Shown here in pieces: positions 1 through 51,700 of a stretch of 64,000 nt of DNA. The first letter of the stretch is position 1. Each line of letters begins with the position of its first letter. The notes below the pieces were generated by a model. It was not told the origin of the DNA and made no database searches. It was given only the letters and a program-made list of their open reading frames with translations. A program made the translations under genes and the position numbers. The DNA comes from Mytilus edulis (Eukaryota): contig NC_092351.1 in assembly GCF_963676685.1 (NCBI RefSeq), positions 20,212,001-20,276,000 on the forward strand, written 5' to 3'.

Positions 1-1956
1 TTGACAAATCTGGTTCGCTGACTTGTGACATGAACAATAAAAATATATTTGATATTTGAAACGGGGAAATATGTTCTGGTTCATCATAAGGAGTTGAAAA
101 ATATCGCTAGATATATAAAAGCTATAATTATGTAGTATACGTTTCAAAACATTAAAACTGATCAAAACTTGCATGGATTTTGATGTGCAGTTTTTTTCCA
201 GTCTGCAGAAGATAGCAAAATAAACAAACACCGGAGTTTCATTTGATACGGCCCACTCCGTTACACAGTTTAAAATACCTATTGTTTGCAGATGTCTGTT
301 GTACATTAAATCAATAATACTCACAACATCAATTATCTTTCCGCCATTTTAGTTTATTTTGGCACCTTTTGCAGGAATGGAAAAAAAAACTGAATAACAA
401 AATCTAGTTAAGTTTTGTAATTTTCTGAAACACGAAATGCATTTAAAATTTATATGTCTAGTTCCTGCCATCCCTTAAAACTTTTGCAGATGCATAGGTA
501 TGTCTGTACACAGAGTAAAATTTGTGGTGTAATTGCGGCCATTTTAGCCAGAAGGTTATGATGAACCTTGGACAACAACCCGACCAAAGAGTAGACAACA
601 AAGAGTACATAATAAATTAGGACACCGAATCCTAGTGGCAACTTTAAATTAACAGAACAATGATCGTGAAAATAGAGGCAAATTGTGTACTTGTATCGAG
701 CGGTAAATTCAATCTTAAATATTCCTGGTCCGCGCAATTTACATAAGAAAAAATAGCTCTACTACTTTTAATTATGCAAATTCATCAGCACCTTGGAGTT
801 GTATGAGCTGTAACGCAGTAAATCACTCTACCATACCTTTTCCATCAACAATTGTAATGTTCCTCTGATACTTTTATTAAATTATTTATCTTGCAGATCT
901 TAAAAATAGATTCAAAATTACATTCAAGCTGCCGCTACATGTCAGTGCATACACTCTTGTATAAATAATAGTGTATGTAGTATTTTTTTTTGTTGAAAAC
1001 GCAAATGATTTTTTTTTTTTTACAATAACTGTCATCATATGGTCATATTTATGTTGAATTTCATTCGATGGACAATGTTATTAACATCCGTGTTGGTGTT
1101 GCTTTTCATAAATTTTTGGTTTCAAAACAAACAAAACGGACTGATATACATAGACAAAACCGGATGATTGTGGCGTAAACAATATTGACCAAACCGGCCT
1201 CTTCCATTTTTACATGACCCATTTCAGTCTTTCATTCCATTCACAGATATACAAGTATTGAGGTTCTCAAAGTGGCTAGTTTTGTAATCTCCGTGTCAAT
1301 ATCTTTCTGTTCATACCTTTCTTCTCGTACAATATGAACAATTTAAGGATTATGTACCCTTGTATTTCTTCAATGCTAAACATGGAAATTTTATAGAAAA
1401 TCTACAGCCATTCCCCTTGTGCTCTCATATTTGGTAATTCAGTACTTGATAGATAGAGGATTATTGCATGCAGTGCTAGCGATGATTTCCTTTAAACAGG
1501 TTTATGAATTTATATATTGGTTAAGGTTTATGTACCCTTCTCACTGGGGTAAAGCTGATGACCGTAACTGCATTCACGGTCATCCCAAGATGTCGGATGA
1601 AAAATTAGGTCAGTTTCTGTATTGTCTGTTAAAGTGTTTCTATATCATTTTCTTTACAAATCATACATTGAAACGATGTAAATTTATAAAAGAATCACTC
1701 GAAAATCACTAATTACTTCCGAGAAATGTGCATGAAACGGGAAATTCGATTTGAAAAAATCGTTAAGATGACCGTAAATCATAATCAAAATATTTTCAAG
1801 ATGACCGTAACATAAAACAAGGATGACCGTGATTGGTAAAAAGATGACCGTAACTTGTAAAGGATGACCGTAGTTTGTAAAGACTGACTGTAATTTATAT
1901 AGGACGAACGTAACTTTTATAGGATGACCATCAATTCTAAGTATTGTATTCAAAGC

Positions 1957-2594
1957 TTTTTTGTTGAGTTTGTCGATCTCAATAAGGGCTCGGTTAGCGG
2001 ATACAAAAATGTCGGTTATTCATTTGGGGATGTACGGCGGGCGGGCGGGCGGGTTCGGGCAGCAATCAAATGTTGTCCGTGCATTAACTCATGAACCGTT
2101 CAACCAAAGCTTTTAAAATTTTAATATGTTGTTACTAACAACTAAATGAAGGTCAAGTTCAATAATGGCGATTTTGACTTTTACCGTTCAGGAGTTATGG
2201 TTCTTTAAAGATTGAAAAATGGAGTTTCCAGTCGTGTCCGTGCATTTACTCATGCACTGTTCTACCTAAGCTTCCCAAATTTTAATATGTTGTTACTGAT
2301 GACAAAATGGAGGTCGAGTTCAATAATGACGATTTTGACTTTTACAGTTCAGGAGTTATGGTTCTTGAAAGATTGTGAAATGGCGTTTCCATTCACGTTG
2401 TTGCATTTACTCATGAACCATTCAATCTAAGCTTTTCAAATTTTAAGATGTTGATACTGATGACAAAATGGAGGTCAAATTTAAAATTGACGATTTTCAC
2501 TTTCACCATTCATCAGTAATGGTTCTTGTGATATTGCCAGGACACAAATAAATATTAATAAATCCGGTTTGCTGTCGTTGTGACAGCCTCTTGT
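1957..2594 (+). repeat. Helentron/HINE-like non-autonomous element with (GGGC)n and internal tandem units
   Basis: T-run start, GGGCGGGCGG microsatellite, three related internal units, CTCTTGTT end. Confidence 0.5.
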
Positions 2595-2734
2595 TTTGAA
2601 CTATAATATAATTGGCCATATTTAGGATTTATAACAATGATAGTAAATTGCATCTTTCTCGTAAACAATGAAATATTTATTGATATCGACGTTAAAATTT
2701 TAACACAAATTGACAGCGATACGACGAAAATTTG

Positions 2735-2982
2735 AAGAAACATGAATATGTCCCTAGTACACGGATGCCTCATCTACACTATCATTTTCTATGTTTAGTG
2801 GACAATGAAAATGGGATAAAACTGTAATTTGGCTTTAGAATTAAAAAGATCATACCATAGGGAAAATGTGTACTAAGTTTCAATTTTATTTAACTTGAAG
2901 CTGGACAAACGGACAAACAGACGAACGGACGAACGTACGCACAGACCAGAAAAACATAATGCCAATAAATGGAGCATTAAAA
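2735..2982. repeat. Dispersed HINE-like repeat (related copies at 30310-30772 and 42325-42650)
   Basis: Shared ...TAGTACACGGATGCC...CACTATCATTTTCTATGTT...(GGAC/AGAC)n...GCAT(T)AAAAA. Confidence 0.6.
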
Positions 2983-3323
2983 ACATTAATAATACATACG
3001 AATATTTGGTAATCGAGCCCATGTGTATGGTTCCAGATGAAGCAGATTAAAATCTTAATTTGTCTTGATATATGCAGGCAGAAACACTTTTGAAATAGAA
3101 CAAAAGAATCGAAGCTCTGTGTATATCGAGAAAGCGATAAATGTTAACTGTAATGTTTGATATAGTAACAAAATTTTAAAAAGTTAATAGAAACAAATAA
3201 AACGACAATTTTCTTATTTTAAAAACACCATTTGCATAAGTTTTCAATGTATCTATTACATAGCAAAACAATAAGATATAAAGTCGACGATATAAAGTCG
3301 ACGACATGGTTCTTATCGGGGAC

Positions 3324-3460
3324 TTTTATAGCTGACTATGCAGTATGGGCTTTGCTCATTGTTGAAGGCCTTACGGTTACCTATAGTTGTTAATGTTTGT
3401 GTCATTTTGGTCTTTTCTGGATAGTTGTCTCATTGGCAATAATACCACATCTTCTTTTTT
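3324..3460. repeat. Short dispersed repeat (also 61058-61192; degenerate near 18000-18125 and 57590-57725)
   Basis: GACTATGCAGTATGGGCTTTGCTCATTGTTGAAGGCC...GTTGTCTCAT...ACCACATCTTC shared between copies. Confidence 0.7.
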
Positions 3461-6100
3461 ATATATAGTATCTAAAGTTGGATGTAAAAAATGCATAACC
3501 TCCGATTTTTTTTTATCACGGACGGAGAACATATCAATCTTTTAGTTCAGAAATTTTCGTGTCTGCCCTTCCATTATGTGAAACAAGAAAAAATTCCCCA
3601 AAACAGGTAACGATTGTATCGAAAAGAGAAAAATCGAGTGCACCTTTTCATGTTAGGGCATGTTTGGGGTGTATATTTTGTCTTTAAAACGTACAAAGCA
3701 AGAGTATTTTATATAGCATATCGCTTCAGATTCTATCATTATTATATATCAAAGCTACAGGTTGACTTTATAACGTAAAAAAATGACAGTACGAAAAGAT
3801 GAAATATATGGGTCAAGTGAGATACCTATCTAATGAATCACAAAAACAGAGTAGGTGTGTTCGAATAGCTATTTTTTTCTAAAAGTACTTGACGACAGTC
3901 TTAATTTGGATGATGAAAATGGATATCTTCGAAAAAATATGATTTTCTTGTGTGTGATAACTAGGGTTTATAATCTTCAACCACTGTTTAGTTTGCCCTT
4001 CCACGAAATATTTAATTAGAATTATTTTAAATGCTTAAGAATTTTCAAAAATTCCATCTGACATCCGAACAGACAATATTTTTAAGTTGAATCAATGCAG
4101 ACAAGATCATTAACTAATGCTCATTAGCTAGTAGATACATTTGTCTTTTAAAGTATAACTGACATATAACGATCGATCGTAATGGTGCTATGTGGTTAAA
4201 TTTATCAGTTTTCAAGAGCAAAATTGGCAGAGCGTCATCCCTACAATGGCTTCCATTTCTACGATTGTGGGCATGAACTGGCGTAATGGGGAGATAATTT
4301 TGAAGAAGTAGAATCCTGACTGTATGAATAACATTTCTGTATATATACAAATTGACAACGTTCCGCCTTGTGATACGCTTTTCGTACAATACTATTTTAA
4401 GGATCTACTTTGCTAGAGCTCACCTTCACTAGTTTATTCGAATGATATTTTCAAAATGTTTCTGTTATTTTATTTGCACGACAAAATGAAAGACGATATA
4501 ATATCAATGGGTGTACATGCAATTTTTTGGCATTTTTAAAAATGTGTATTTATTATATGTCATTAAAAGGAATCCCAGAAACAAACAAAAATCTTTTGTC
4601 GAGCAGTTGAAGGCTGTGCACCCCATTTTTTTTTTATTATGCTTGTAAGGTGTCATTTTATCGCGCTTTTGTGGCATGTTTTCCCTTCCTGTTCATTTGC
4701 ATGTCTTTTGGCAATCATTTCATACAAAAAGATAGTTGTATAATTACGGATATTTCTTAGAATTGAGGGTCATCCTTTAAAAGTTACGGTCATCATTTAC
4801 AAATTACGGTCATCTTAAAAGCAGTTACGGTCAGCCTTGTTATGAATCGCTGATTCTGTTACGGTCATCTCGATTGTGATTTACGGTCATCTTGGCGATT
4901 TTTTCAAATCGAATTTCCCGTTTCATGCACATTTTTCAGAAGTAATTAGTGATTTCCGAGTGATTCTTTTATAAATTTACATCGTTTCAATGTATGATTT
5001 GTAAAGAAAATGATATAGAAACACTTTATCAGACAATACAGAAACTGACCTAATTTTTCATCCGACATCTTGGGATAACCGTGAATGCAGTTACGGTCAT
5101 CAGCTTTACCCCAGTGCTTCTGTAGCCATTTTTGTACGAATTTTTCAAACCTCAATTGTATCAAAACTAAAGATATAATAAATAATAGAGATAGGCCATT
5201 TAGTACATGTTCCAAGGGGAAAATTGATGCAAAGCATTATTTTTTACTGTTTCATTGCATTTGATAGTAAAAGAGGACTTTGTGGCAAATAAATCAAGAT
5301 TTTTATAGAAAATCCACAGCCTTTAATACAGAGATTTTTGTTATAAAATTTGAAACATAAATTACTCACTTGATTTTCTATGATGTGCTAGTGTTTATTT
5401 TTTACAAAAAGTTCTAAGAAACCTGTAAATTCCAAAACACCTCGTGCTAAGTCACTAAAGTCGAGCGCACCCTAAACGGTGTACTTGATTTTGGCCATAT
5501 TTATACTTGTCTTAACCAGAAACTACATTTATAAACTTGTTTTAAGAAAATCAATGCTAGCACTGCATGCAATAATCCTATATCTATCAGTCATCAAATT
5601 GCCAAATATGAGAGTACAAGGATAAAGGCTGTGGATTTTTTTTTTAAAATCTTGATTTATTTGCCACAAAGTCCTCTTTTTCTATTAAATGCAATGGAAC
5701 ATAAAAAAATAATGCTTTGCCTCAAGTTTCCCCTTGGAATGTGTACAAAATGGCCTATCTCTATTATTCATTATATTTGTAGTTTTGATACAATTGAAGT
5801 TTGAAAAGTTCGTACGTAACAAAAATGGCTACAGAAGGGTACATAAACCTTAAAATAAATATAAATATGGACTAATTCAAGTACACCTTCTAGGGTGCGC
5901 TCGATTTTAGTGACTCAGCACGAGGTGTTTTGGAATTTAAAGGGTGTTTAGGATTTTTTGAAAACAATAAAGGCTAGCTGATCATAAAAAAAAAACAAGT
6001 GAGTAAACTATGTTTCAAAGTTTATAACAAAAAATCTCTGTATTAAAGTGTGGATTTTCTACAAAATTCTTCATTTAATTTTCACCATATTCCCTTTTAC

Positions 6101-6139
6101 CAAGGATTTGTATAGTATACTATACTATACAAATCCTTG
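6101..6139. mobile_element. P-superfamily-like excision footprint or mini-element (17-nt TIR + 5 + 17-nt TIR; 7-bp TSD)
   Basis: CTTTTAC|CAAGGATTTGTATAGTA-TACTA-TACTATACAAATCCTTG|CTTTTAC. Confidence 0.7.
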
Positions 6140-6668
6140 CTTTTACTATTAAATGCAAAGAAACTATAAATAATTATGCTTATCACGAAGTTTCCCCCTG
6201 GTATATGTACGAATCGGCCCATCTCTATTATTTATTATCTTTGCTGTTTTGATACTATTGCAGTTTGAAAAGTTCATAATTCACAGGCCACAGAAGGGGT
6301 CATAAACCTTAACGAGATATTAAACAAATTTGAGGCAAGGTTCACTCAATTCGTCATTTTGACATGCATTTTTACTTATTTCTCCGTTAATGTTGAACAG
6401 TTGTAGAAAATATTAATATATGTGAACACATTCTTCGGTATCATAAAAATAACAAATAAATAAACAAATCAACTTTTTCTCTATCCGATTATGTTCTGTC
6501 ACCGTGCTGGATATTAAATACCATCAAGTCCAAACATTTTGTGTCGATGTGGTTTGGACACAGTGTTTCTGATGGTATAAAAAAAAACACCGAATTTTTC
6601 AGCAATGACCTAGGTTATCAAGTTTACAGGCACGATAGAAACAGACCCCCATGGGAAGTACTTATTGC

Positions 6669-13546: not shown

Positions 13547-16500
13547 TCTGTATACTTACATACATTTACTATGAATAACTGTATTTGTTATAATTTACTA
13601 TAAATTTCAATGGTTATCTTGGGGGAGGGGGATGTTCATAGAGTACAGAAAAACAGATGGTTTTAAAATCGGTATTTGGAAAAATGTGCCCAGTCCCTAA
13701 GTACCTTTGACTTTTGATACCTCTCCTGAAGTTCTCCAGTCAGTATATTTTTTTTACAGTTTACATACGCTCTATTTCCCCGCGATTTCGCGGGTGTGTT
13801 CTAGTTTACTATTAAAGCACATTGCATGGCACAACAGCAAAAAATCTTGAATATTGTGTCTATTTTTGCCCCAACTGTTCAGGGTTGGACCTCTGTGGGC
13901 GTATCCAGTTGCGCTCAGCGTAGCAGTTTTATTTAACCTGGATGGCTCTATAGGCACGATGAAAACCCATTTGCATCTCTTATCTATATCATGAATTTAT
14001 AAAAAGAGTACATATTATATGTATATTATTTCTTTTTTTATTATAAAGTCGTGAATTTGTTTATTTATCATTCTACATCAGAAATTCATAGCAGATTCAG
14101 TGAAAATGGTATTTATATAGACCGATAATTTATGGAATACTAGATCGCGAATAACGCTTATTATGAAGGAGGGATTTCCATGGAACGCCGCGGCTGTGTT
14201 ATGGCGTACTCTGATATAACGTTATAAGTTGTTTTGTTATTATTATGTACCATAGTTTGTTTGAATTTCCATTGAAAAAGTGTGAGGGTATCTCCACAGA
14301 CACCATAGTCCATATCAGCCCTCTGATTGGTTTACCAGAGGATAGAAAAATGCCGTTCATGTGGTGTATATTAGATACCACACACTTTTAGCCAGAAACT
14401 ACAATGAACCACATTTTGTATGCCTCCGTCGTACCGGAAGGGGGGGCATTAAATGTTATCCTTGTCCGTCCGTCTACCATTTTAGAGTTATGCCCCTTTC
14501 ACAAATTGAAAAATTGCTGAGTGGTTAGTTTCCGTTCTCTAACTTAAATTTTGCCTCAACCAAATGTTATGAAACTTATACACAATGCTAATATCAACAC
14601 ACACCAATTATCTCTGTGGTTTTTTTTCAACCTTAAAACTTTTGTGTTGGGTAGTAGTCTCATTGGTGAATACCAATTTGTCACTTTATTTGTGGAAAAC
14701 GTATAGTGCAACCTATTTAAGTTTTAATTAACTCCCCAACTGGATAATATCCGTTGAGGAGGTGTTCCATAACTGGAAGGATATACATATAGAAGAAGAA
14801 GAAGATACCCCTTATCCTTTATTTTTCTAAAATAAATACAACAATGAATTTTAATAACTATTATATAAAAAAAATTGAAACTGAAAGCCACATATATCAA
14901 TCCTGTGATCCTCGAGAATAACACACTGGTCATCTCATTAAACAAAAAAAAGATGCATCATATTCCATAATGCAAACATTTCACTACAAAACTAGAGGCT
15001 CTAAAATGCCTGTGACGCTCACCTGGTCTATGTTCATACATAACAAAGGACATTCATAATAGATGAGAATAGAATTATAAGACAAAATTATGTTTTGGTG
15101 ATGATGATGTGTGTTTGTCAATCTTCATTACTGAACATTCTTGCAGTTTACAATTTTCTCTATTTATAATGAACTTTGCTCCGAGTAGTTTCACGGGTAG
15201 TAAGGTCGTCATATCGAGGAGCGTTTAGTACAGTGATTTTGTCATAATTTGGATAAGTTTGACATGGTTAATTTATGTTGCTTTCCTAAACTATTGCCTC
15301 AGTTCTATTCACACGAGCAGATAAAAAGCAAATAAGATGCTTGAATCTGTATTGGAGGTCAAACGATCTATATTGGAATTGTTGTTTCACGAAATTAACG
15401 CAGAATAAGCAAGATATCGGAATTGCTATGGTTTGGTTAAGCGATTGACATGGTTCGGTTCAGAGTCTAGAAATTCGTCATGGTTTTGGTCAAGATTGTC
15501 ATGGTTTAGATCGAAATAAATATATATGTGTTTCACTTTAATACTGAAAAGTTGATTGATAGCGCCTGTTATTGAACTAAGTCACACTATATATTAACTG
15601 CCGGAGAAGAAAAAAAGCCTGTTTAACCAAATTTAGTGGGTGCAATCGTCAAAGCGTATGTTAAACATGTCATGTTACTTTTCGTAAGTTTTCTACAATA
15701 TAAATTTAAAAGTCACTGCTCTTTTAAACAAGCTTTCGATATAATTTTACAAAAAAAAAAAGACAAAGCGTTGCTTCTGTTTCACATATAATCTTTTGTC
15801 TATATGTCCAAAGTCATGCTTGACTCTGCCGGGGATATCATGAGCGGCATCACTAGCCAAATAGCTAAAGACTTCTATTCAAAAGTGGCAGCCAGTCAAA
15901 AAGTAACTCCTGTTTTTCATTTTCTAGAAAACTATTCATTTGTTGGTTTTTCTTTATTGCAAATTTTGAACTAGTTTATGATGAATAAAAGGAGATGTGG
16001 GGTTATAGGTCCATGATACAGTAACCCAACTACAAAACTAACCAAAGTATATTAAGAGGACATCATAAGTCTTCAACCATTAACGAAACCGAATAGTTAC
16101 GCGTGACATGGACAACAGTTTTAAAACTTATTGGTTTTAAAACTATAATAGGTGAAATTACAATAAAAAGTACTTTCAAAGTTCAAATTTAAATATATGA
16201 AAGATCACAACACCAATTTTGGATTTAAGCCGGTATAATGTTCAAGTTTATCAATTATTATTAGGAATCAATAAACATCTTTGTAATATTGTATAAATGC
16301 ATCGTGTATAGTATCATTGAATTATTTCAAATATTTTACTTTTTATGTAATACAGTTTCTATACTAATATCTGAAAAAAACCCTCCTGCTATCTAGTTTT
16401 AAGTATGAGGTGGTATATTATTAAATGTGATTGAAAAAAGGATTGAAATGCAAAGAAACACGTGTTATATTGTCTGCTACATGTACATTTAAACTGTGTA

Positions 16501-16838
16501 CGACCTTAATTGACCTGGCTAGACAAGAAATCATCGTTTGTAATAGGATAGAACGCATTACAAGATGGACGAAGATGAAACAGATGGTAAGTTTGTTGAT
16601 ATATATCACAAGTACACTTCATTTGAACTTCTAAGAACATTCAATGATATTTTATGCTATCTATATTTGCCGTTTATCATTTTTTGCTTATTTGATTTTC
16701 AATTTACTAGGTAATATCAAATGTAAGATGACGTGGGAAATACATTTTGATTATATCATACGATTTTATTTGTCTATGTAAAATGCATCCAATCAAGGAA
16801 GGAGGGTTTTGAGTACTGGTGTAAAATTGCGCGTTTGA

Positions 16839-17252
16839 AATTCGCACACATTCGATGTTTGCGGCAAAAAATATACTTCAAGAATCGGCCTAAGTCGTCA
16901 TTTAAGAGACCCTGCTAGTTCACGCCCAATAGAGTGTGATATTTGCCATCAACGGTTTAACGATAACGCACATTTTGAAAGTCATCGCAACAGTAAACAT
17001 TTAAATTACAAACAGTTTAAATGTACCGTATGCAGCAAGGCTTTCGCTTATAGACAATCAATGGCAAGACATGTCAAAGAATGTCAAGGGAATAAGTCCT
17101 ACATCTGTATGGAATGTAATGCTGTGTTTAACAGCAAGCGTTCACTAAACCAGCACCATAGTGGGATACACGAGCAGAAAGAGCATAAATGTATGTGTGG
17201 AAAGTCCTTCCGTTTGGTTCGATCATTCACCAGACACAGTAAAATATGTTAA
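16839..17252 (+). pseudogene. C2H2 zinc-finger array (five fingers, first degenerate) inside the element
   Basis: HTFDVCGKKYTSRIGLSRHLRDP-ECDICHQRF..H..H-KCTVCSKAF-ICMECNAVF..H..H-KCMCGKSF; in-frame TGA at 16836; possible upstream exon MDEDETD with gtaagt donor near 16587; AATAAA near 17268. Confidence 0.75.
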
Positions 17253-17380
17253 ACAAAATAGTATTTAATAAATTTAAAATTTGATTTTTGATTCATTTCT
17301 AGCATTCATAAAGTTTAAATGATATAAATTTTGTCTCATTTTCAAGATAAGGACATTTTTAGATATCCTAACATGCTCTT

Positions 17381-17526
17381 TTATGGGGATGGATTTTTTT
17401 CTTCATCTTTCCTATAGTACTGACGAAGTCTTTGAGCACCATGTGCAAATCCATCATATGGGTTCACGATTGCAATATTTACGTTTAGCAGTAGATCTTC
17501 GGGGTTGGTCAAACTTTGCATGGCTT
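17381..17526 (-). other. Putative terminal exon of a second, convergent gene in the element (unknown protein)
   Basis: tttatttcag acceptor then open frame EAMQSLTNPEDLLLNVNIAIVNPYDGFAHGAQRLRQYYRKDEEKNPSP-stop. Confidence 0.4.
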
Positions 17527-19275
17527 CTGAAATAAATAAACGTAGTATTGTTAAATTAGTTCTTTTGGATTCAAGTTTATAATATGATTTAGGAAATAAA
17601 AGATTTAAAGATTAAAAAACAAATATTGAAAAATAGGATCCTCTCAATATTGTTTCATATAATATTATGCTATTCAATGAAAGTACAGTGTTAAATATAT
17701 GTCGTTATTTATTTGTGTCTTTAGTGTTTCTGTTACTTGATTTTCTTGTTTAAACCCGATCTGGTGAGTTTACATGTGTGGCATGGTTAAGGCGAAGAAG
17801 AGATTGGGGAACCCGCAAACATGTTTTACTCCGCAATATTTTGTATATACTGTCTCAAGTTAAGTGTCTGTAATTCCGTGAATATCGTATGTAACTGTGT
17901 ATCATATTTTGCTATTTATTTTGGACAGAAATTAGCTGATGATTTTCTAATTGGAATTCCTATACATTGAATTTTGTCGCAGCCTTTTATATCATGCTAA
18001 GAAATATGGTTTTGCTCATTGTTGAATGTTGAAGGCCTCTTGATGACAAATAGCTGCTAACATCTACGTCATTTGATCTCAGGTGGATAGTTATCTCATT
18101 GGCAATCATACTGCATCTACTTATAACATATTACTACATTGTTTGTGCGTTTTTATGTCCTTCTATGTTTCAAATGGAACGATTTATGTTAATTTTGATA
18201 GTAACTCTTCATTATACACGAGAAGAATTACATAACTGAACCATGTCGAACATGAACTTAACCATGACACTAATGAACCAAACCATGACACAGATATTTC
18301 AGTAATTTTGAATTGATTGCAAAAGTAGGTATTTTTCAGAATAATTGACTGCAGTGTTATATCACGAAGATATATGTGATGTAACAGACTGTAAGAAAAT
18401 AACTTTTTTTATGCACGATAAACCAATTAGCAAGTTTTAAATTTTGACATACGCAAGCTTTGTTCTGCATTAAATCATTAACCATTAGATACCACTTGTG
18501 ATGTACTATGATATTTACTTTATACAAAGGTACTTACCAGCTTGAATTAGTGATGAGAAGTTCCGTTTACAAAATATCCCAATGTTTACATTTTGGCATT
18601 GATTGTCATCAAAAAGACTTAACACCGTCATGTCAAACTTATCCAAACTATGACAAAATCACTGTACTAAACGCTCCTCGATATGACGACCTTACTACCC
18701 GTGAGTTTTAAAGGAAAATATTTTGTAAAAGTTTACAAATATTTACCTAAGTTACGAAAATTGTTTAAAATTTACTATAAAGAGCAAAATTAAATAATTT
18801 GTTCACCAAACTTTATACTTCCTTTATCTAGAGGTGTTTGACTCTGGGAGCATAAAATTTCAGTAATCACAAGTGTGACTATGATTTTCATCTCCCAAAC
18901 ACTTCTCTAGTACCCAGATAGTTTTATAGTAATCTCAGAGTAGAACAACAAGAAATTAGTACATTTCTGGTCTATTTTGTCGCCGGAATTTCAATAGACG
19001 CTTGAGACTTTAATCAATACTGTCAAATCAACATTTTGTAATGATAATTTTCTGTTTGATTAATTCCAAATTTTATACCAGGAAGATTAAGAATTTGACA
19101 TTGAATTGTTGTAAACTGTATGTTTCTCACTAGATGTCATTTGGTCACTTGTGTTGGTTGAGTTGCCGTCTCATTGATCTAAATCTTTTATAATTTATAA
19201 ATATATGCCCACTTCAATAAGTAATTATAGGATATATTTTAGAAGAGACATATTAGTTACTAAATATATTTCTCG

Positions 19276-48700: not shown

Positions 48701-51700
48701 ATATATTATGCTTTTCCCATGCACTGTCAAATATCATTTATGGTGAATTCTTGTTTATCTAGGCGTTGAACTTTTAAATAAGTTTTATGTGAAGTTATAT
48801 ATTTTTAACATGTCAACTGGTCAGTAAGGTAAAACTATGTATATTATGGTTACCAAACTGCCAATAATAAACCTTTAAAGAATGAACCAAATATGCATAG
48901 CAAAATATAACTGTGTTTCCAAATGTAATGTAAAAAAATATTAGTTAATTCTTGATTAACATGGTTAATACATCATCTTGTTATTATTGAATATTGAGTT
49001 ATAACAATCTGCATACAAAAATTTAGAGAAAAGAAAGAAAAAAGCAATGCTTAACTAGCCTGAAGCCATTGTGTGCTGTAATACAGAAAAGTGATTTTAG
49101 AAAACATTCTTAAAGGGAAAATTCGCGATTTTTTACTTATGGTTTAAATATGTTCATTATGACATAATATATATATTCACAAAGTTTTATCGCTATATGT
49201 GCAGTAATAAAGGAGAAATTCAATAATTAATGAAAAAATATTAACTACTTCCTGTAGGTCGTGACGTTTTCTCCTGGTTTTTGCATGCCGGGATTTAAAA
49301 TAAAATCATTAAAAGTCTTGGTTTTTAATCATATTTTACCGTTATCGTAAGCGTGCCGATGACTAATGCTATATCTAATAACCATCCGATAATAAGAAAA
49401 TAAAACGCACAGTCGTGCAGTTGTACACATTCATGAGAAAAATTTCTATATTTACCTTATATATTTCGATTTATTTTTGTAGACAGCACAAGAAATTATT
49501 ATAATTATTTATTTTTGCTTAAATTTATACTTTTTGAGACTGATAAAGTGAATAAATCAAAGTATATAACTTGAACTGTTAAGACAATATATAGGTTTCC
49601 GCTTATTGACCTTTTACTATCTACGCTATGACTTTATTTATGCGATGTGTGTATTAGTCTCCGACAATACTCGTGAAAGACCTGTATAAAGGTGAAATGT
49701 TATTTGCAGATCGGTAATTAGCTTGGTCTCTAGGGCACACCGTGCCAGGTGTGACTGTCTATTCGGATCAGTGGGTTATACGACAGGAGGTCAAGTTTAA
49801 TACACAAATTTAAAATACATTTTCAAGGTGTGAACAAATACAAGTGAATCGCCGTGGAATTTTTTAATTATATTTGGTGCTATTATTTTATTTGTATTCA
49901 AAAGAAGTTACTAAACTAAGAAATGAACCGGTTAAAGTCTGGAAACTAAATTTAGTTGTCGGAATGAAATGATATACACTCTTATCATTTATTTATATTT
50001 TCTTAAAAGGGAAAATAAAACTAGTTTTACACAAGCATTTTAATTGTCCTAAATAGGCAAAAAAATGTACGGGAACACTTAAATTTAAGACATTTGAAAG
50101 CCATGACCAAATGAAAGGTGTACCTGTATTACATTTTTACTTTTACACATAGTCTCAGATTCTAGTGAGGTCGGAAGGGTTAAATGAAATAATATAGATT
50201 ATCTGGTATCATTTGGATAATGGAAGAAGCTATACTATAAAAACAAAGAAATTTATTACCAATACACTCGAGATCAAAGGTTGTTAATTTTTCTGATCCA
50301 GTTAATTTTTACTCACATATTTTTTTTATATTTTGATTTGAGCGTGCTTGTTTTTACATGACACTTTTTTTTTCATTTCTCCTATTTCGTTGGACGAAAG
50401 CAAACCGGTAGGTACATTATATTCTGCATTTGTATAGTCCGAAGTTTCCTAATTGATATTCTTGTTTCACATGTATAATGAATGATCAATTATAAAAAAC
50501 GGCATTCATTTTGAAATATAGCACTGTTTTCTAGAGAGAAAATGAAGTCACATATGCGAGGGTATAACAGGGACGAACTGATTAAAAATAACGGAACCAA
50601 CAATTATATATAAAACGAAAGAATAAAAGTAAAATTTAATTTAGATAACATCAAGGATTTGTATAGTAAAACAAATCCTTGATAACATGGAGATTTGGTC
50701 TATACCTATTCTTATAACCACTCTTAAATTTTGTAAGATTTTGTACACAGGCTGTATATCACGGACAGTTTTATATTGGTATGGTATATTTTATACGTTT
50801 TACCTGAGCACACCTGGTTCACTCGCAATCACGCACGTGATTTATTGACCTTGTTCATTGTGTATTAAATTAAACAAGCCTGCCAGGAAGTCGACCGTTA
50901 GAATACCCGAATATGTCATTTTTACAATACCCCGGTAATTACCGATATTAAGCCATGCTGATTACAAGAAGACAAGTTTTTTTAACGTTGGTCAAGTTAG
51001 ATCAAAACCCCAAATAATCTAAAAATATACGTTAGAAAAATCTCAGTTTATAATTCCTCCACAATAAGTATCCCCGGACTTTTTTTCACTTTATTGTGAC
51101 TACTTTTGCATTATTATAGCATATATCCTATATAGTACTTGAAACTGCATCTCCGTGCCAAAAATGTAAATTTAGTGACGAGCTAAAACCAATAAAATTG
51201 AGAATCAATGGAAATGGGAATGTACGATCTTTTGTCATTTACAGCTTTTCAACCTGACTTCACCATTGTACGCTGAATATTTAACCCTCTAAAAAAATTA
51301 AGATTAATTTTTTGAAATATTCTTATCAATCTTAGTGAACCATTACTTGATTTGATGATTTTGGAAACTATGTAGACTTCTTCCATTACTTGGTCGGCTG
51401 GAACATCCATCAGTTTGACAAGTCATTTGAACACTGATTAACGGACATGTCATGCTGGATACTAGGACTTTGTGGTAATTAGATATCCGTGGTCATTAGT
51501 TTTCAAGATGGCGTCTTCCCGAGAATTGAGAGTCGATTTTAAAAAGCTAATAACTCACTTATCTAGACGAATAAACCTTTAATATTTTGGGAATATGCTT
51601 ATTTATTTAGGATAAACATAATATCAAATTTTATTTTTTTTGCGAATTTTCCCTTTAACTGAGTTTGAAGTCCAAATAAGTTATCTTATGTTAAAATGTT

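What the first reader, a model, noticed from the sequence alone, without database searches (positions are those of the whole stretch)
15187..18708. Transib/RAG-like-ended transposon carrying a C2H2 zinc-finger gene tail-to-tail with an unknown gene
Seen: ~73-bp TIRs starting CACGGGTAG, exact 5-bp TSD AGTTT, subterminal CATGGTT repeats. Inside are a plus-strand five-finger C2H2 ORF (16839-17252, decaying) and ~130 bp away a convergent exon (17526-17381) with a clean acceptor and open frame; AATAAA/ATTAAA signals overlap near 17264-17273. Known: CAC plus 5-bp TSD marks Transib/ProtoRAG, and RAG-like transposons carry two convergent genes; classic Transib carries only a transposase. Neither peptide is recognisably RAG1 or RAG2. 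Inference: deletion derivative of an undescribed multi-gene transposon family that spreads ZF genes or uses a ZF accessory protein. Best candidate for a new system in this window.
Basis: partly seen in the sequence, partly recalled or inferred. Interest (0 to 1): 0.78.

Follow-up and report, generated by a model that had tools for sequence, protein, structure and literature searches.

The report
Decayed copy of two-gene P-like transposon
This stretch is a broken, non-autonomous copy of a young mussel jumping gene whose full 9.5-kb form carries a zinc-finger gene and a P-element-like cutting enzyme with a second nuclease built into it, a design for which I found no description in print.

Summary
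Window 15192-18703 is a 3512-bp element with 75-bp TIRs (99%), starting CACGGG, and a 5-bp TSD, AGTTT. The family has 244 TIR ends in this 1.37-Gb genome, probably Mytilus.

The Transib/RAG reading fails. Two 9.47-kb copies elsewhere (99.3% alike) show the full element:
- A 250-aa, seven-finger C2H2 ORF (read from a TTG; proposed two-exon gene).
- A convergent three-exon gene of about 1461 aa.

AlphaFold models of the large protein match Drosophila P element transposase at Z 28.4 (385 of 442 residues). RAG1, BbRAGL and HzTransib score 7-10. A lambda-exonuclease (YqaJ) domain (Z 15) sits inside the transposase fold.

The window copy lacks the 5.35-kb transposase core and 1.2 kb of the zinc-finger gene. 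Its minus-strand "exon" is the frameshifted last transposase exon.

Colinear convergent zinc-finger genes lie behind all three transposase lineages examined (38-39% identical). A sister family also makes 5-bp TSDs and starts CACAGTG. Both transposase introns appear as GT..AG joints in contigs of a probable RNA run.

Seven literature searches found no description, but Repbase and Dfam could not be checked. Earlier notes of this scan (s1-838800, s1-832322, s1-836128, s1-838820) report the same design elsewhere in this genome.

The parts
15187..15191 (.). Left target-site duplication AGTTT
   Evidence: Same 5 letters at 18704-18708. Exact 5-bp TSD in 10 of 12 copies of the family read.
15192..15266 (+). 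Left 75-bp terminal inverted repeat, starts CACGGGTAGTAAGG
   Evidence: I1, 99% complementary. Its 30-mer with up to 3 mismatches occurs 128 times forward and 116 times reverse in the genome, against 0 and 0 for the control.
15263..15506 (+). Left subterminal CATGGTT repeats (15263, 15449, 15479, 15500; a variant at 15428)
   Evidence: The same positions are kept in the 9.5-kb copy L048.
16565..16586 (+). Exon 1 of the zinc-finger gene (ATG..GATG|gtaagt)
   Evidence: Read by eye. Its phase fits the acceptor ...tttcag|AGGCA of the intact copy, L048 about 2088. No RNA joint was seen for this intron, so this is inferred.
16743..16852 (.). Junction of a 1.2-kb internal deletion, followed by the last ~110 bp of a 497-bp insertion that had interrupted zinc-finger exon 2
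   Evidence: Window element 1-1554 = L031 1-1560 and 1552-3512 = L031 2773-4733, at 99%. L031 2386-2882 is absent from copies L032, L035, L042 and others.
16854..17252 (+). Remnant of zinc-finger exon 2: fingers 3-7 of 7, with a stop 3 codons early
   Evidence: tblastn with the 250-aa L048 ORF: residues 116-250, 90% identity. Pfam zf-C2H2 at 1.2e-15.
17264..17273 (.). Overlapping AATAAA (+) and ATTAAA (-) signals between the two convergent genes
   Evidence: Read. Function inferred.
17381..17526 (-). Decayed last exon (exon 3) of the transposase gene
   Evidence: Aligned to L048 exon 3, with 1-nt insertions at two places. Stop after 23 codons in the true frame. The exon 3 start is confirmed in L048 by the joint 3062->3685.
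17527..17706 (-). Remnant of transposase intron 2
   Evidence: L048 2408-3245 = L031 2884-3742. Intron 2 of L048 is 3063-3684.
17707..17712 (.). Junction of the 5.35-kb deletion that removed transposase exons 1-2 and the start of the gene
   Evidence: L048 3245 is joined to 8592 in L031-type copies, at L031 positions 3737-3742. Converted with the offset 1221 taken.
18239..18287 (-). Right subterminal repeats (AACCATG, three copies, 21-bp spacing)
18629..18703 (-). Right 75-bp terminal inverted repeat
18704..18708 (.). Right target-site duplication AGTTT

Best explanation
Window 15192-18703 is a dead, non-autonomous copy of a young cut-and-paste DNA transposon family, with about 120 copies in this genome.

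The autonomous form is 9.47 kb (L048 = C9:51366306-51375787). It carries two convergent genes between 75-bp TIRs.

Gene 1 is a two-exon gene for a seven-finger C2H2 protein (250-aa ORF).

Gene 2 is a three-exon gene of about 1461 aa. Its product is a P-element-like DDE transposase. A coiled-coil segment and a complete lambda-exonuclease-type (YqaJ, PD-(D/E)XK) domain are inserted between the first strands and the rest of the RNase H-like fold. Its N-terminus carries a C2H2-like finger where P element transposase has a THAP domain.

Shown here:
- the anatomy and copy relations;
- the 5-bp TSD;
- the fold match;
- the nuclease insertion;
- splicing of the transposase gene;
- the same partner gene behind three transposase lineages.

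Inferred:
- The transposase (proposed catalytic residues D273, D822, E1319, with a DxxH motif at 1147-1150) cuts at the CAC ends and integrates with a 5-bp stagger.
- The built-in 5'-3' exonuclease processes the cut ends or the gaps.
- The zinc-finger protein is the sequence-specific end-binding factor. It would read the mirrored CATGGTT arrays and recruit the transposase, as the Myb-like partner does in Harbinger (recalled).

The window copy arose from the common 4.2-4.7-kb deletion derivative, which has lost 5.35 kb holding transposase exons 1-2. It then gained a 497-bp insertion in the zinc-finger exon, lost a further 1.2 kb, and picked up frameshifts. It can move only if the one intact copy supplies the proteins.
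For: Anatomy and copies:
- TIR and TSD.
- TIR ends in the genome: 128 + 116, control 0.
- Copy relations.
- Exact 5-bp TSD in 10 of 12 copies.

Full-length copies:
- L047 and L048 are 99.3% alike over 9.5 kb, lie on different chromosomes and have different TSDs (ATAAA, ATTAA).
- ORFs of 250 aa and 1360 aa.

Domains and relatives:
- Pfam: YqaJ at 4.1e-11 on residues 473-617, zf-C2H2 at 4e-19.
- Relatives: 24 with E up to 7.7e-237, including Mytilus edulis at 98%, Owenia and Mercenaria, none named as a transposase.
- 814 clusters at E<=1e-3 in 1.84 billion representatives.

Fold:
- C-terminal model (pLDDT 74.8): 6p5a at Z 22.4, against RAG1 8.8, BbRAGL 8.3, HzTransib 7.0, Hermes 6.4.
- 1200-residue model (pLDDT 86.8, pTM 0.78): 6p5a at Z 28.4, rmsd 3.3, 385 of 442 residues, chain 142-569.
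- In the same model, LHK-Exo and lambda exonuclease score Z 15.5 and 14.8 on model residues 298-510.
- Foldseek agrees.
- PF21787 (P-type RNase H N-terminal domain) hits 4 of 34 long homologs, best E 1.4e-5.

Conserved residues: D572, E586 and K588 (nuclease) and D822 are invariant in 16 sequences. D113, D662 and E1159 of the model are at least 90% conserved in 61 sequences.

Splicing: joints 3062->3685 and 3824->4432, CT..AC on the + strand, in contigs of run X2 at depth about 21. 55 raw RNA reads of run X24 lie mostly on exon 1. Exons 2 and 3 are open.

Partner gene: convergent ORFs of 237 aa and 231 aa with multiple C2H2 fingers lie behind two paralogous transposases that are 38-39% identical. 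They are colinear with the L048 protein, with 34 invariant columns.

Sister family: starts CACAGTG. I read an exact 5-bp TSD in 35 of 38 listed end pairs.
Against: - No sequence-level hit of the L048 protein itself to any P-element Pfam family at E<=0.1.
- A profile of 23 relatives does not find 6p5a among PDB sequences.
- The 50 PF21787 loci of this genome do not include this family.
- The link to P therefore rests on predicted structure plus 4 of 34 weak Pfam hits.
- No residue-level superposition was available, so the DDE triad is inferred.
- The zinc-finger ORF is frameshifted in L047 and in most 4-kb copies.
- No spliced read supports the zinc-finger intron.
- Run X2 is only guessed to be RNA.
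- No excision footprints with TIR stubs were found for either family, so nothing here shows the cleavage geometry.
- Only the flank on one side of each paralog was read.
Confidence: 0.85

Rival explanations
1. One reading: a Transib/RAG-like transposon, with a RAG1-type transposase in the autonomous form, and the two convergent genes standing for RAG1-like and RAG2-like partners.
For: - 5-bp TSD and CAC ends.
- Two convergent genes.
- The sister family starts with CACAGTG, the consensus RSS heptamer (recalled).
- RAG1, BbRAGL and HzTransib do appear among the fold matches at Z 7-10.
Against: - P element transposase matches at Z 28.4 with 385 of 442 residues aligned, about three times the RAG1 score.
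- No RAG1 Pfam hit on the protein.
- The partner is a C2H2 protein, not a Kelch/PHD protein.
- The PF12940 scan of the genome found nothing, but its control was silent too, so it says nothing either way.
Confidence: 0.03
2. The transposase reading is right, but the C2H2 gene is a passenger. It would be a host gene captured early and kept by descent, with no role in transposition.
For: - The ORF is broken in L047 and in most non-autonomous copies.
- No splice evidence for it.
- P-type transposases are not known to need a partner (recalled).
- The transposase has its own N-terminal C2H2-like finger.
Against: - Colinear partner genes in the same convergent position behind 3 of 3 transposase lineages that are only 38-39% identical.
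- These partners have themselves diverged to 26-30% identity while keeping seven-finger order and length of 231-250 aa.
- A passenger would be expected to be lost in some lineages.
- Decay in non-autonomous copies is expected under either view.
Confidence: 0.2
3. It is an ordinary member of an already catalogued superfamily (P proper, hAT5, Kolobok, Dada or ISL2EU) that the tools here could not name.
For: - Repbase and Dfam could not be consulted.
- The fold is P-like.
- ISL2EU elements carry a YqaJ gene (PMC4482050, passages).
- Some Dada transposases hold an exonuclease domain between the second D and DxxH (PMC3706591, passages).
Against: - TSD is 5 bp. P has 7-8, Kolobok TTAA, hAT mostly 8 (recalled). 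ISL2EU has 2 bp with GG ends (PMC4482050). Dada has 6-7 bp in small-RNA genes (PMC3706591).
- No THAP, hAT-dimerisation or Harbinger-type DDE Pfam hit.
- Hermes scores only Z 6.4.
- Canonical PF21787 loci of this genome are other loci.
- Seven literature searches found no description.
Confidence: 0.12

Closest known systems
P element / THAP9 superfamily (Drosophila P element transposase, PDB 6p5a)
   Same: The RNase H-like DDE transposase fold with its insertion domain matches at Z 28.4, rmsd 3.3, 385 of 442 residues. A D..H motif follows the second Asp and a ...E.FF... motif lies near the C-terminus (by eye). TIRs are accompanied by internal/subterminal repeats.
   Different: - 5-bp TSD, not 7-8 bp (recalled).
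- 75-bp TIRs that start CAC.
- No THAP domain.
- A YqaJ nuclease and a coiled coil inserted in the catalytic fold.
- A second, convergent C2H2 gene.
- No TIR-stub footprints found.
- Not detected by the P Pfam models in this genome.
Transib / ProtoRAG
   Same: CAC termini, 5-bp TSD and two convergent genes. The sister family starts CACAGTG.
   Different: The transposase fold matches RAG1, BbRAGL and HzTransib only at Z 7-10. The partner is a C2H2 zinc-finger protein, not RAG2-like.
ISL2EU (PIF/Harbinger-like, PHIS)
   Same: A two-gene element that uses a YqaJ exonuclease (PMC4482050 and PMC9179366, passages read).
   Different: In ISL2EU the YqaJ protein is a separate ORF, the transposase is Harbinger-like with THAP/HTH, the TSD is 2 bp and the ends start GG. 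Here the nuclease is fused inside a P-like transposase and the second gene is a zinc-finger protein.
Dada
   Same: A DDE transposase with a DxxH motif, distantly like P, hAT, MuDR and Kolobok. Some members hold an exonuclease domain inside the catalytic region (PMC3706591, passages).
   Different: The Dada exonuclease is of the DEDDy 3'-5' type. Its TSD is 6-7 bp, it targets snRNA/tRNA genes and it has a single gene. None of this applies here.
PIF/Harbinger two-gene logic (Myb-like partner; recalled)
   Same: A transposase plus a separate DNA-binding partner gene inside the element.
   Different: An unrelated transposase fold. The partner there is Myb/SANT, not C2H2, and the TSD is 3 bp.

Membership tests
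Transib / RAG-like | 5-bp target-site duplication | tested here: met
   10 of 12 copies have an exact 5-bp TSD. One has a 6-bp repeat (L039) and one has inverted flanks (L038).
Transib / RAG-like | Termini start 5'-CAC, RSS-like heptamer | tested here: met
   CACGGGT in this family and CACAGTG in the sister family. A nonamer or spacer was not examined.
Transib / RAG-like | RAG1-type transposase core | tested here: not met
   RAG1 Z 9.9, BbRAGL 9.6 and HzTransib 7.0, against 28.4 for P element transposase. No PF12940 hit on the protein at E<=0.1.
ProtoRAG | Convergent RAG2-like (Kelch) partner gene | tested here: not met
   The partner is a seven-finger C2H2 protein.
P element superfamily | P-type RNase H-like transposase with insertion domain | tested here: met
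   6p5a_A: Z 28.4, rmsd 3.3, 385 of 442 residues. PF21787 hits 4 of 34 homologs.
P element superfamily | Sequence membership in the Pfam TNP-like / Tnp_P_element models | tested here: not met
   No hit for L048 at E<=0.1. None of the 50 PF21787 loci of the genome is a locus of this group.
P element superfamily | N-terminal THAP DNA-binding domain | tested here: not met
   No THAP hit. The N-terminus shows CxxC..HxxxxH instead (by eye).
P element superfamily | 7-8-bp TSD (recalled) | tested here: not met
   5 bp.
P element superfamily | Staggered cleavage that leaves TIR stubs in excision footprints (recalled) | tested here: inconclusive
   0 matches for 13-nt stub pairs with a 0-30 nt gap in either family. 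Absence of scars proves little.
P element superfamily | GTP-binding insertion domain and GTP dependence | not testable with these tools
   Only first and last aligned residues are reported, and no ligand prediction is available.
ISL2EU | Harbinger-like DDE transposase, separate YqaJ ORF, 2-bp TSD, GG ends (PMC4482050) | tested here: not met
   YqaJ is fused inside a P-like protein. TSD is 5 bp and the ends start CAC.
hAT (hAT5) | hAT transposase with C-terminal dimerisation domain | tested here: not met
   Hermes Z 6.4. No PF05699 hit.
Dada | 6-7-bp TSD inside small-RNA genes (PMC3706591) | tested here: not met
   5-bp TSDs of varied sequence.

The most novel reading that the evidence does not exclude
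These elements would be an undescribed, superfamily-rank lineage of animal cut-and-paste transposons. A P-like DDE transposase has a lambda-type 5'-3' exonuclease built into its catalytic fold and works with an obligatory C2H2 zinc-finger partner gene. It nonetheless produces Transib/RAG-style ends: CAC or CACAGTG termini and a 5-bp TSD. This would be a case in which end chemistry and transposase fold are uncoupled. It would also mean that part of what automated annotation calls 'Transib-like' in lophotrochozoans belongs to another enzyme family.
Probability: 0.4. Interest if true: 0.75.

Novelty: new variant of a known kind. Interest (0 to 1): 0.6.

Why it matters
If the group is indeed uncatalogued, it adds a widespread transposon type: 814 protein clusters at 50% identity, named members in bivalves, a gastropod and an annelid.

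Three features would be of mechanistic interest:
- a nuclease domain nested inside a transposase fold;
- a conserved zinc-finger partner gene;
- Transib-like ends made by a P-like enzyme.

It also gives a practical warning. CAC ends plus a 5-bp TSD do not identify Transib/RAG relatives.

One copy (L048) has all reading frames open, and the family is 93-99% alike. It may therefore still be active in mussels, and it could be tested directly in a transposition assay.

Tried and rejected
- RAG1 Pfam scan of the genome: no hit, but the control was silent too, so it is uninformative.
- PDB sequence search with the 1360-aa exon-1 protein and with a 23-sequence profile: no transposase hit, only weak lambda exonuclease (E 1.9).
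- ESM Atlas: no usable hit.
- Short MITE forms: none of 30 loci had a second TIR within 1.5 kb.
- Excision footprints with TIR stubs: 0 in both families.
- Protein remnants of the transposase elsewhere in the window, including the CAC/5-bp element at 1537-5121: none.
- Subterminal repeats in the sister family: only two weak pairs, so I could not test co-variation of repeats and zinc fingers.
- Splicing of the zinc-finger gene: no joint seen.
- The joint 2018->4200 (GT..GT, depth 5, side 21) and the variants at 6516 and 6755 were set aside as non-canonical or copy variants.
- Literature: seven searches gave no description of a P-like/YqaJ fusion or of a P-like element with a 5-bp TSD.
- Papers read as passages only: PMC4482050, PMC9179366, PMC10225492, PMC7826175, PMC3706591. 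PMC10983969 was seen only in a search listing.
- Supplements were closed. Those of PMC4482050 and PMC3706591 might list related families.
- Repbase and Dfam were not available.
- TSD lengths of other superfamilies, P element biology, the RSS heptamer and the Harbinger partner are recalled, not taken from a call.
- The TSD count for the sister family (35 of 38) was read by eye from the listing. Two pairs show 4-bp repeats (C2:67889303, C2:76082410). One pair 16 kb apart (C3:63418768) does not match. Unpaired ends in that listing were not counted.
All searches and folds used exon 1 alone. Exons 2 and 3 were only translated, each by itself. The figure of about 1461 aa is arithmetic from the exon lengths.

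Full report
**1. What is at the coordinates**

The sequence and the repeat finder confirm an element at 15192-18703 (3512 bp). Its TIRs are 75 bp and 99% complementary, and they start CACGGGTAG. The element is flanked by AGTTT on both sides.

The CATGGTT motif is clustered and mirrored. Four forward copies lie in the first 320 bp. Three reverse copies lie at 18239, 18260 and 18281, spaced 21 bp apart. The whole-window count alone is unremarkable (21 against 12.4 expected).

The plus-strand frame 16839-17249 is open and is a C2H2 array (Pfam 1.2e-15). The minus-strand exon has a good acceptor at 17526.

**2. It is a repeat family, and this copy is a double deletion derivative**

- The first 100 bases recur at 96-100% identity. 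40 of 347 candidates were scored.
- The terminal 30-mer, with up to 3 mismatches, occurs 128 times forward and 116 times reverse. The reversed control gives none. That is about 120 copies in a 1.37-Gb assembly.
- None of 30 loci had a second TIR within 1.5 kb. Paired ends lie mostly 3.0-5.2 kb apart.
- The nearest relative, L031 (4733 bp), is 99% identical. It shows that the window copy lacks L031 positions 1561-2772.
- L031 and the window also share a 497-bp insertion that other copies lack. It interrupts the zinc-finger exon.
- TSDs are exactly 5 bp in 10 of 12 copies read. The exceptions are L039, with a 6-bp repeat, and L038, whose flanks are inverted complements.

**3. The autonomous form**

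Two end pairs lie 9.47 kb apart. These copies, L047 and L048, are 99.3% identical. They sit on different chromosomes with TSDs ATAAA and ATTAA. They hold 5.35 kb that the common copies lack, at a point equal to window position about 17710.

L048 has two large ORFs:
- a 250-aa plus-strand ORF with seven C2H2 fingers;
- a 1360-aa minus-strand ORF.

I read the gene models by eye. The large gene has three exons: L048 8511-4433, 3825-3685 and 3062-2897. Exons 2 and 3 are open. Its tail...GAQGIRQYHRKDEEKILPHKRACYDI, aligns with the tails of homologs from Owenia, Mercenaria and Mytilus edulis.

Both introns appear as joints 3062->3685 and 3824->4432. They read CT..AC on the plus strand, which is GT..AG on the gene strand. 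They occur in contigs of run X2 at depth about 21. In addition, 55 raw RNA-seq reads of run X24 lie mostly on exon 1. X2 is only guessed to be RNA, but a canonical spliced form argues for it.

The window's exon 17526-17381 is exon 3 of this gene. It carries two 1-nt insertions, one shared with L031 and one private. In the true frame it stops after 23 codons.

The zinc-finger gene is proposed to have a short first exon (window 16565-16586). Its phase fits the acceptor at L048 about 2088. No RNA joint supports this.

All searches used exon 1 alone.

**4. What the large protein is**

Sequence searches:
- Pfam finds only YqaJ (PF09588, 4.1e-11, residues 473-617).
- PDB sequence searches and the Atlas gave nothing.
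- Homologs are many but unnamed. There are 24 in the word-indexed search, the best being Mytilus edulis at 98%, plus Owenia and Mercenaria.
- There are 814 clusters at E<=1e-3, 434 at <=1e-10 and 172 at <=1e-30 in the exhaustive search.
- Named members among ten looked up are Batillaria and Owenia, as 'hypothetical' or 'YqaJ domain-containing'.

C-terminal model: an AlphaFold model of the C-terminal 670 residues (23 sequences, pLDDT 74.8) matches Drosophila P element transposase. Foldseek gives E 1.8e-4. VIA-align gives Z 22.4 with 285 residues aligned. RAG1 scores 8.8, BbRAGL 8.3, HzTransib 7.0 and Hermes 6.4.

Longer model: a model of residues 161-1360 (61 sequences, pLDDT 86.8, pTM 0.78) raises the match to Z 28.4, rmsd 3.3, with 385 of 442 residues of the chain aligned. 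The aligned chain range now starts at residue 142 instead of 249. Model residues 298-510 match LHK-Exo and lambda exonuclease at Z 15.5 and 14.8.

The part of the protein before the nuclease therefore supplies the first elements of the transposase fold. The coiled coil (model 139-267) and the nuclease are insertions within it.

Conserved residues:
- D572, E586 and K588 (a PD..ExK signature) and D822-G-Q are invariant in 16 sequences.
- D113, D662 and E1159 of the model, which are D273, D822 and E1319 of the protein, are at least 90% conserved in 61 sequences.
- The catalytic assignment is inference. No residue-level superposition was available.

Other sequence-level evidence:
- 4 of 34 long homologs hit PF21787, the P-type RNase H N-terminal domain, with best E 1.4e-5. 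19 of 34 hit YqaJ.
- The genome's 50 PF21787 loci are all other loci. This lineage is therefore distinct from canonical P/THAP9 elements, which the genome also holds.

**5. The partner gene is conserved**

A genome search with the C-terminal domain found 66 matches.

Within this family:
- L048 has the only fully open copy (1366-aa frame).
- L047 has a break near the C-terminus.
- There is one decayed copy at 80% identity and one fragment.

Beyond this family there are many paralogous lineages, 28-39% identical, with ORFs of 1100-1511 aa.

Both flanks show the last transposase exon with the same tail motif, followed by a convergent multi-finger C2H2 ORF:
- 237 aa at L051 3559-4272;
- 231 aa at L053 1824-2519.

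The three proteins are colinear, 26-30% identical, with 34 invariant columns that include the finger ligands and a Trp in the last finger. That makes 3 of 3 lineages examined.

The sister family on C10 ends ...CTACACTGTG, so its TIR starts CACAGTGTAG. It has 286 + 278 ends. I read exact 5-bp TSDs in 35 of 38 listed pairs. Two pairs have 4-bp repeats and one is a non-pair.

Within the window's family the zinc-finger ORF is intact only in L048. It is frameshifted in L047 and broken in most 4-kb copies.

**6. Mechanism**

Shown: a TIR/TSD-bounded, multi-copy, recently active element with a P-like DDE enzyme, a nested PD-(D/E)XK nuclease with an intact signature, a conserved zinc-finger partner gene, and a transcribed and spliced transposase gene.

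Inferred:
- cut-and-paste transposition with a 5-bp stagger at the target;
- end or gap processing by the built-in 5'-3' exonuclease. There is a precedent in Dada, where a DEDDy exonuclease sits between the second D and DxxH and was proposed to process cleaved ends (PMC3706591, passages);
- end recognition by the zinc-finger protein at the mirrored CATGGTT arrays. The transposase lacks the THAP domain of P elements.

No TIR-stub footprints were found, so the cleavage geometry is open.

**7. Comparison and novelty**

The element works like a P-type transposon in its fold. It fails the membership tests on TSD length, THAP domain and Pfam models.

It resembles Transib/ProtoRAG in its ends, TSD and two convergent genes, but not in either protein.

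It shares the use of a YqaJ nuclease with ISL2EU. There the nuclease is a separate ORF beside a Harbinger-like transposase, with a 2-bp TSD and GG ends (PMC4482050, PMC9179366, passages).

Seven full-text searches found no description of this design. Repbase and Dfam could not be checked, and supplements were closed.

After I had formed this reading (stated), a look-up showed that the scan had noted the same design on other pieces of this genome. These are s1-838800 (same 75-bp TIR and 5-bp TSD), s1-832322, s1-836128 and s1-838820. They are unchecked AI notes and are not independent evidence, but they agree with what I tested here.

**8. Verdict**

It is wrong on the Transib/RAG affiliation.

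The window copy itself is a dead relic. Its value is that it leads to a probably uncatalogued P-like/YqaJ two-gene transposon group.

Interest is 0.6. Novelty: new variant of a known kind.

Noticed in passing
window 1537-5121: Another element with long TIRs that start CACTGGGGTAAAGC and an exact 5-bp TSD, CTTCT. It holds no remnant of the transposase or zinc-finger proteins (tblastn). It may be a non-autonomous member of the same P-like/YqaJ group rather than Transib.
   Followed up: partly
window 6094-6146 and 50645-50688: Short palindromic stubs, CAAGGATTTGTATAGTA...TACAAATCCTTG. The first is flanked by CTTTTAC on both sides (7 bp). They look like excision scars of a different, canonical P-type family. 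The genome has at least 50 PF21787 (P-type transposase) loci.
   Followed up: partly
L031 2886-3383 (element positions 2386-2882); window 16743-16852: A 497-bp insertion that interrupts zinc-finger exon 2. Only L031 and the window copy share it. Its nature (nested small element?) was not examined.
   Followed up: no
L034 3079-9871; L040 with L049 (C3:52914367-52927950): Two copies of the family with large internal additions (about 6.8 kb, and ends 13.6 kb apart), probably nested insertions of other elements.
   Followed up: no
L038 (C8:76743269-76747919): The 8 letters flanking this copy are reverse complements of each other (gactctat / atagagtc) instead of a direct 5-bp duplication.
   Followed up: no
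L048 2998-3029 (= window about 17410-17445): A contig of run X1 covers this part of transposase exon 3 at depth 243. It carries the 1-nt insertion typical of the non-autonomous copies. The remnants may be read through at a high level, or this may simply reflect DNA copy number. Run X1 is only guessed to be RNA.
   Followed up: no
G000 C10:55589929 and C10:43560036: Two copies of the sister family each keep a 1511-aa open transposase frame. That family has over 500 TIR ends, so it may be active as well.
   Followed up: partly
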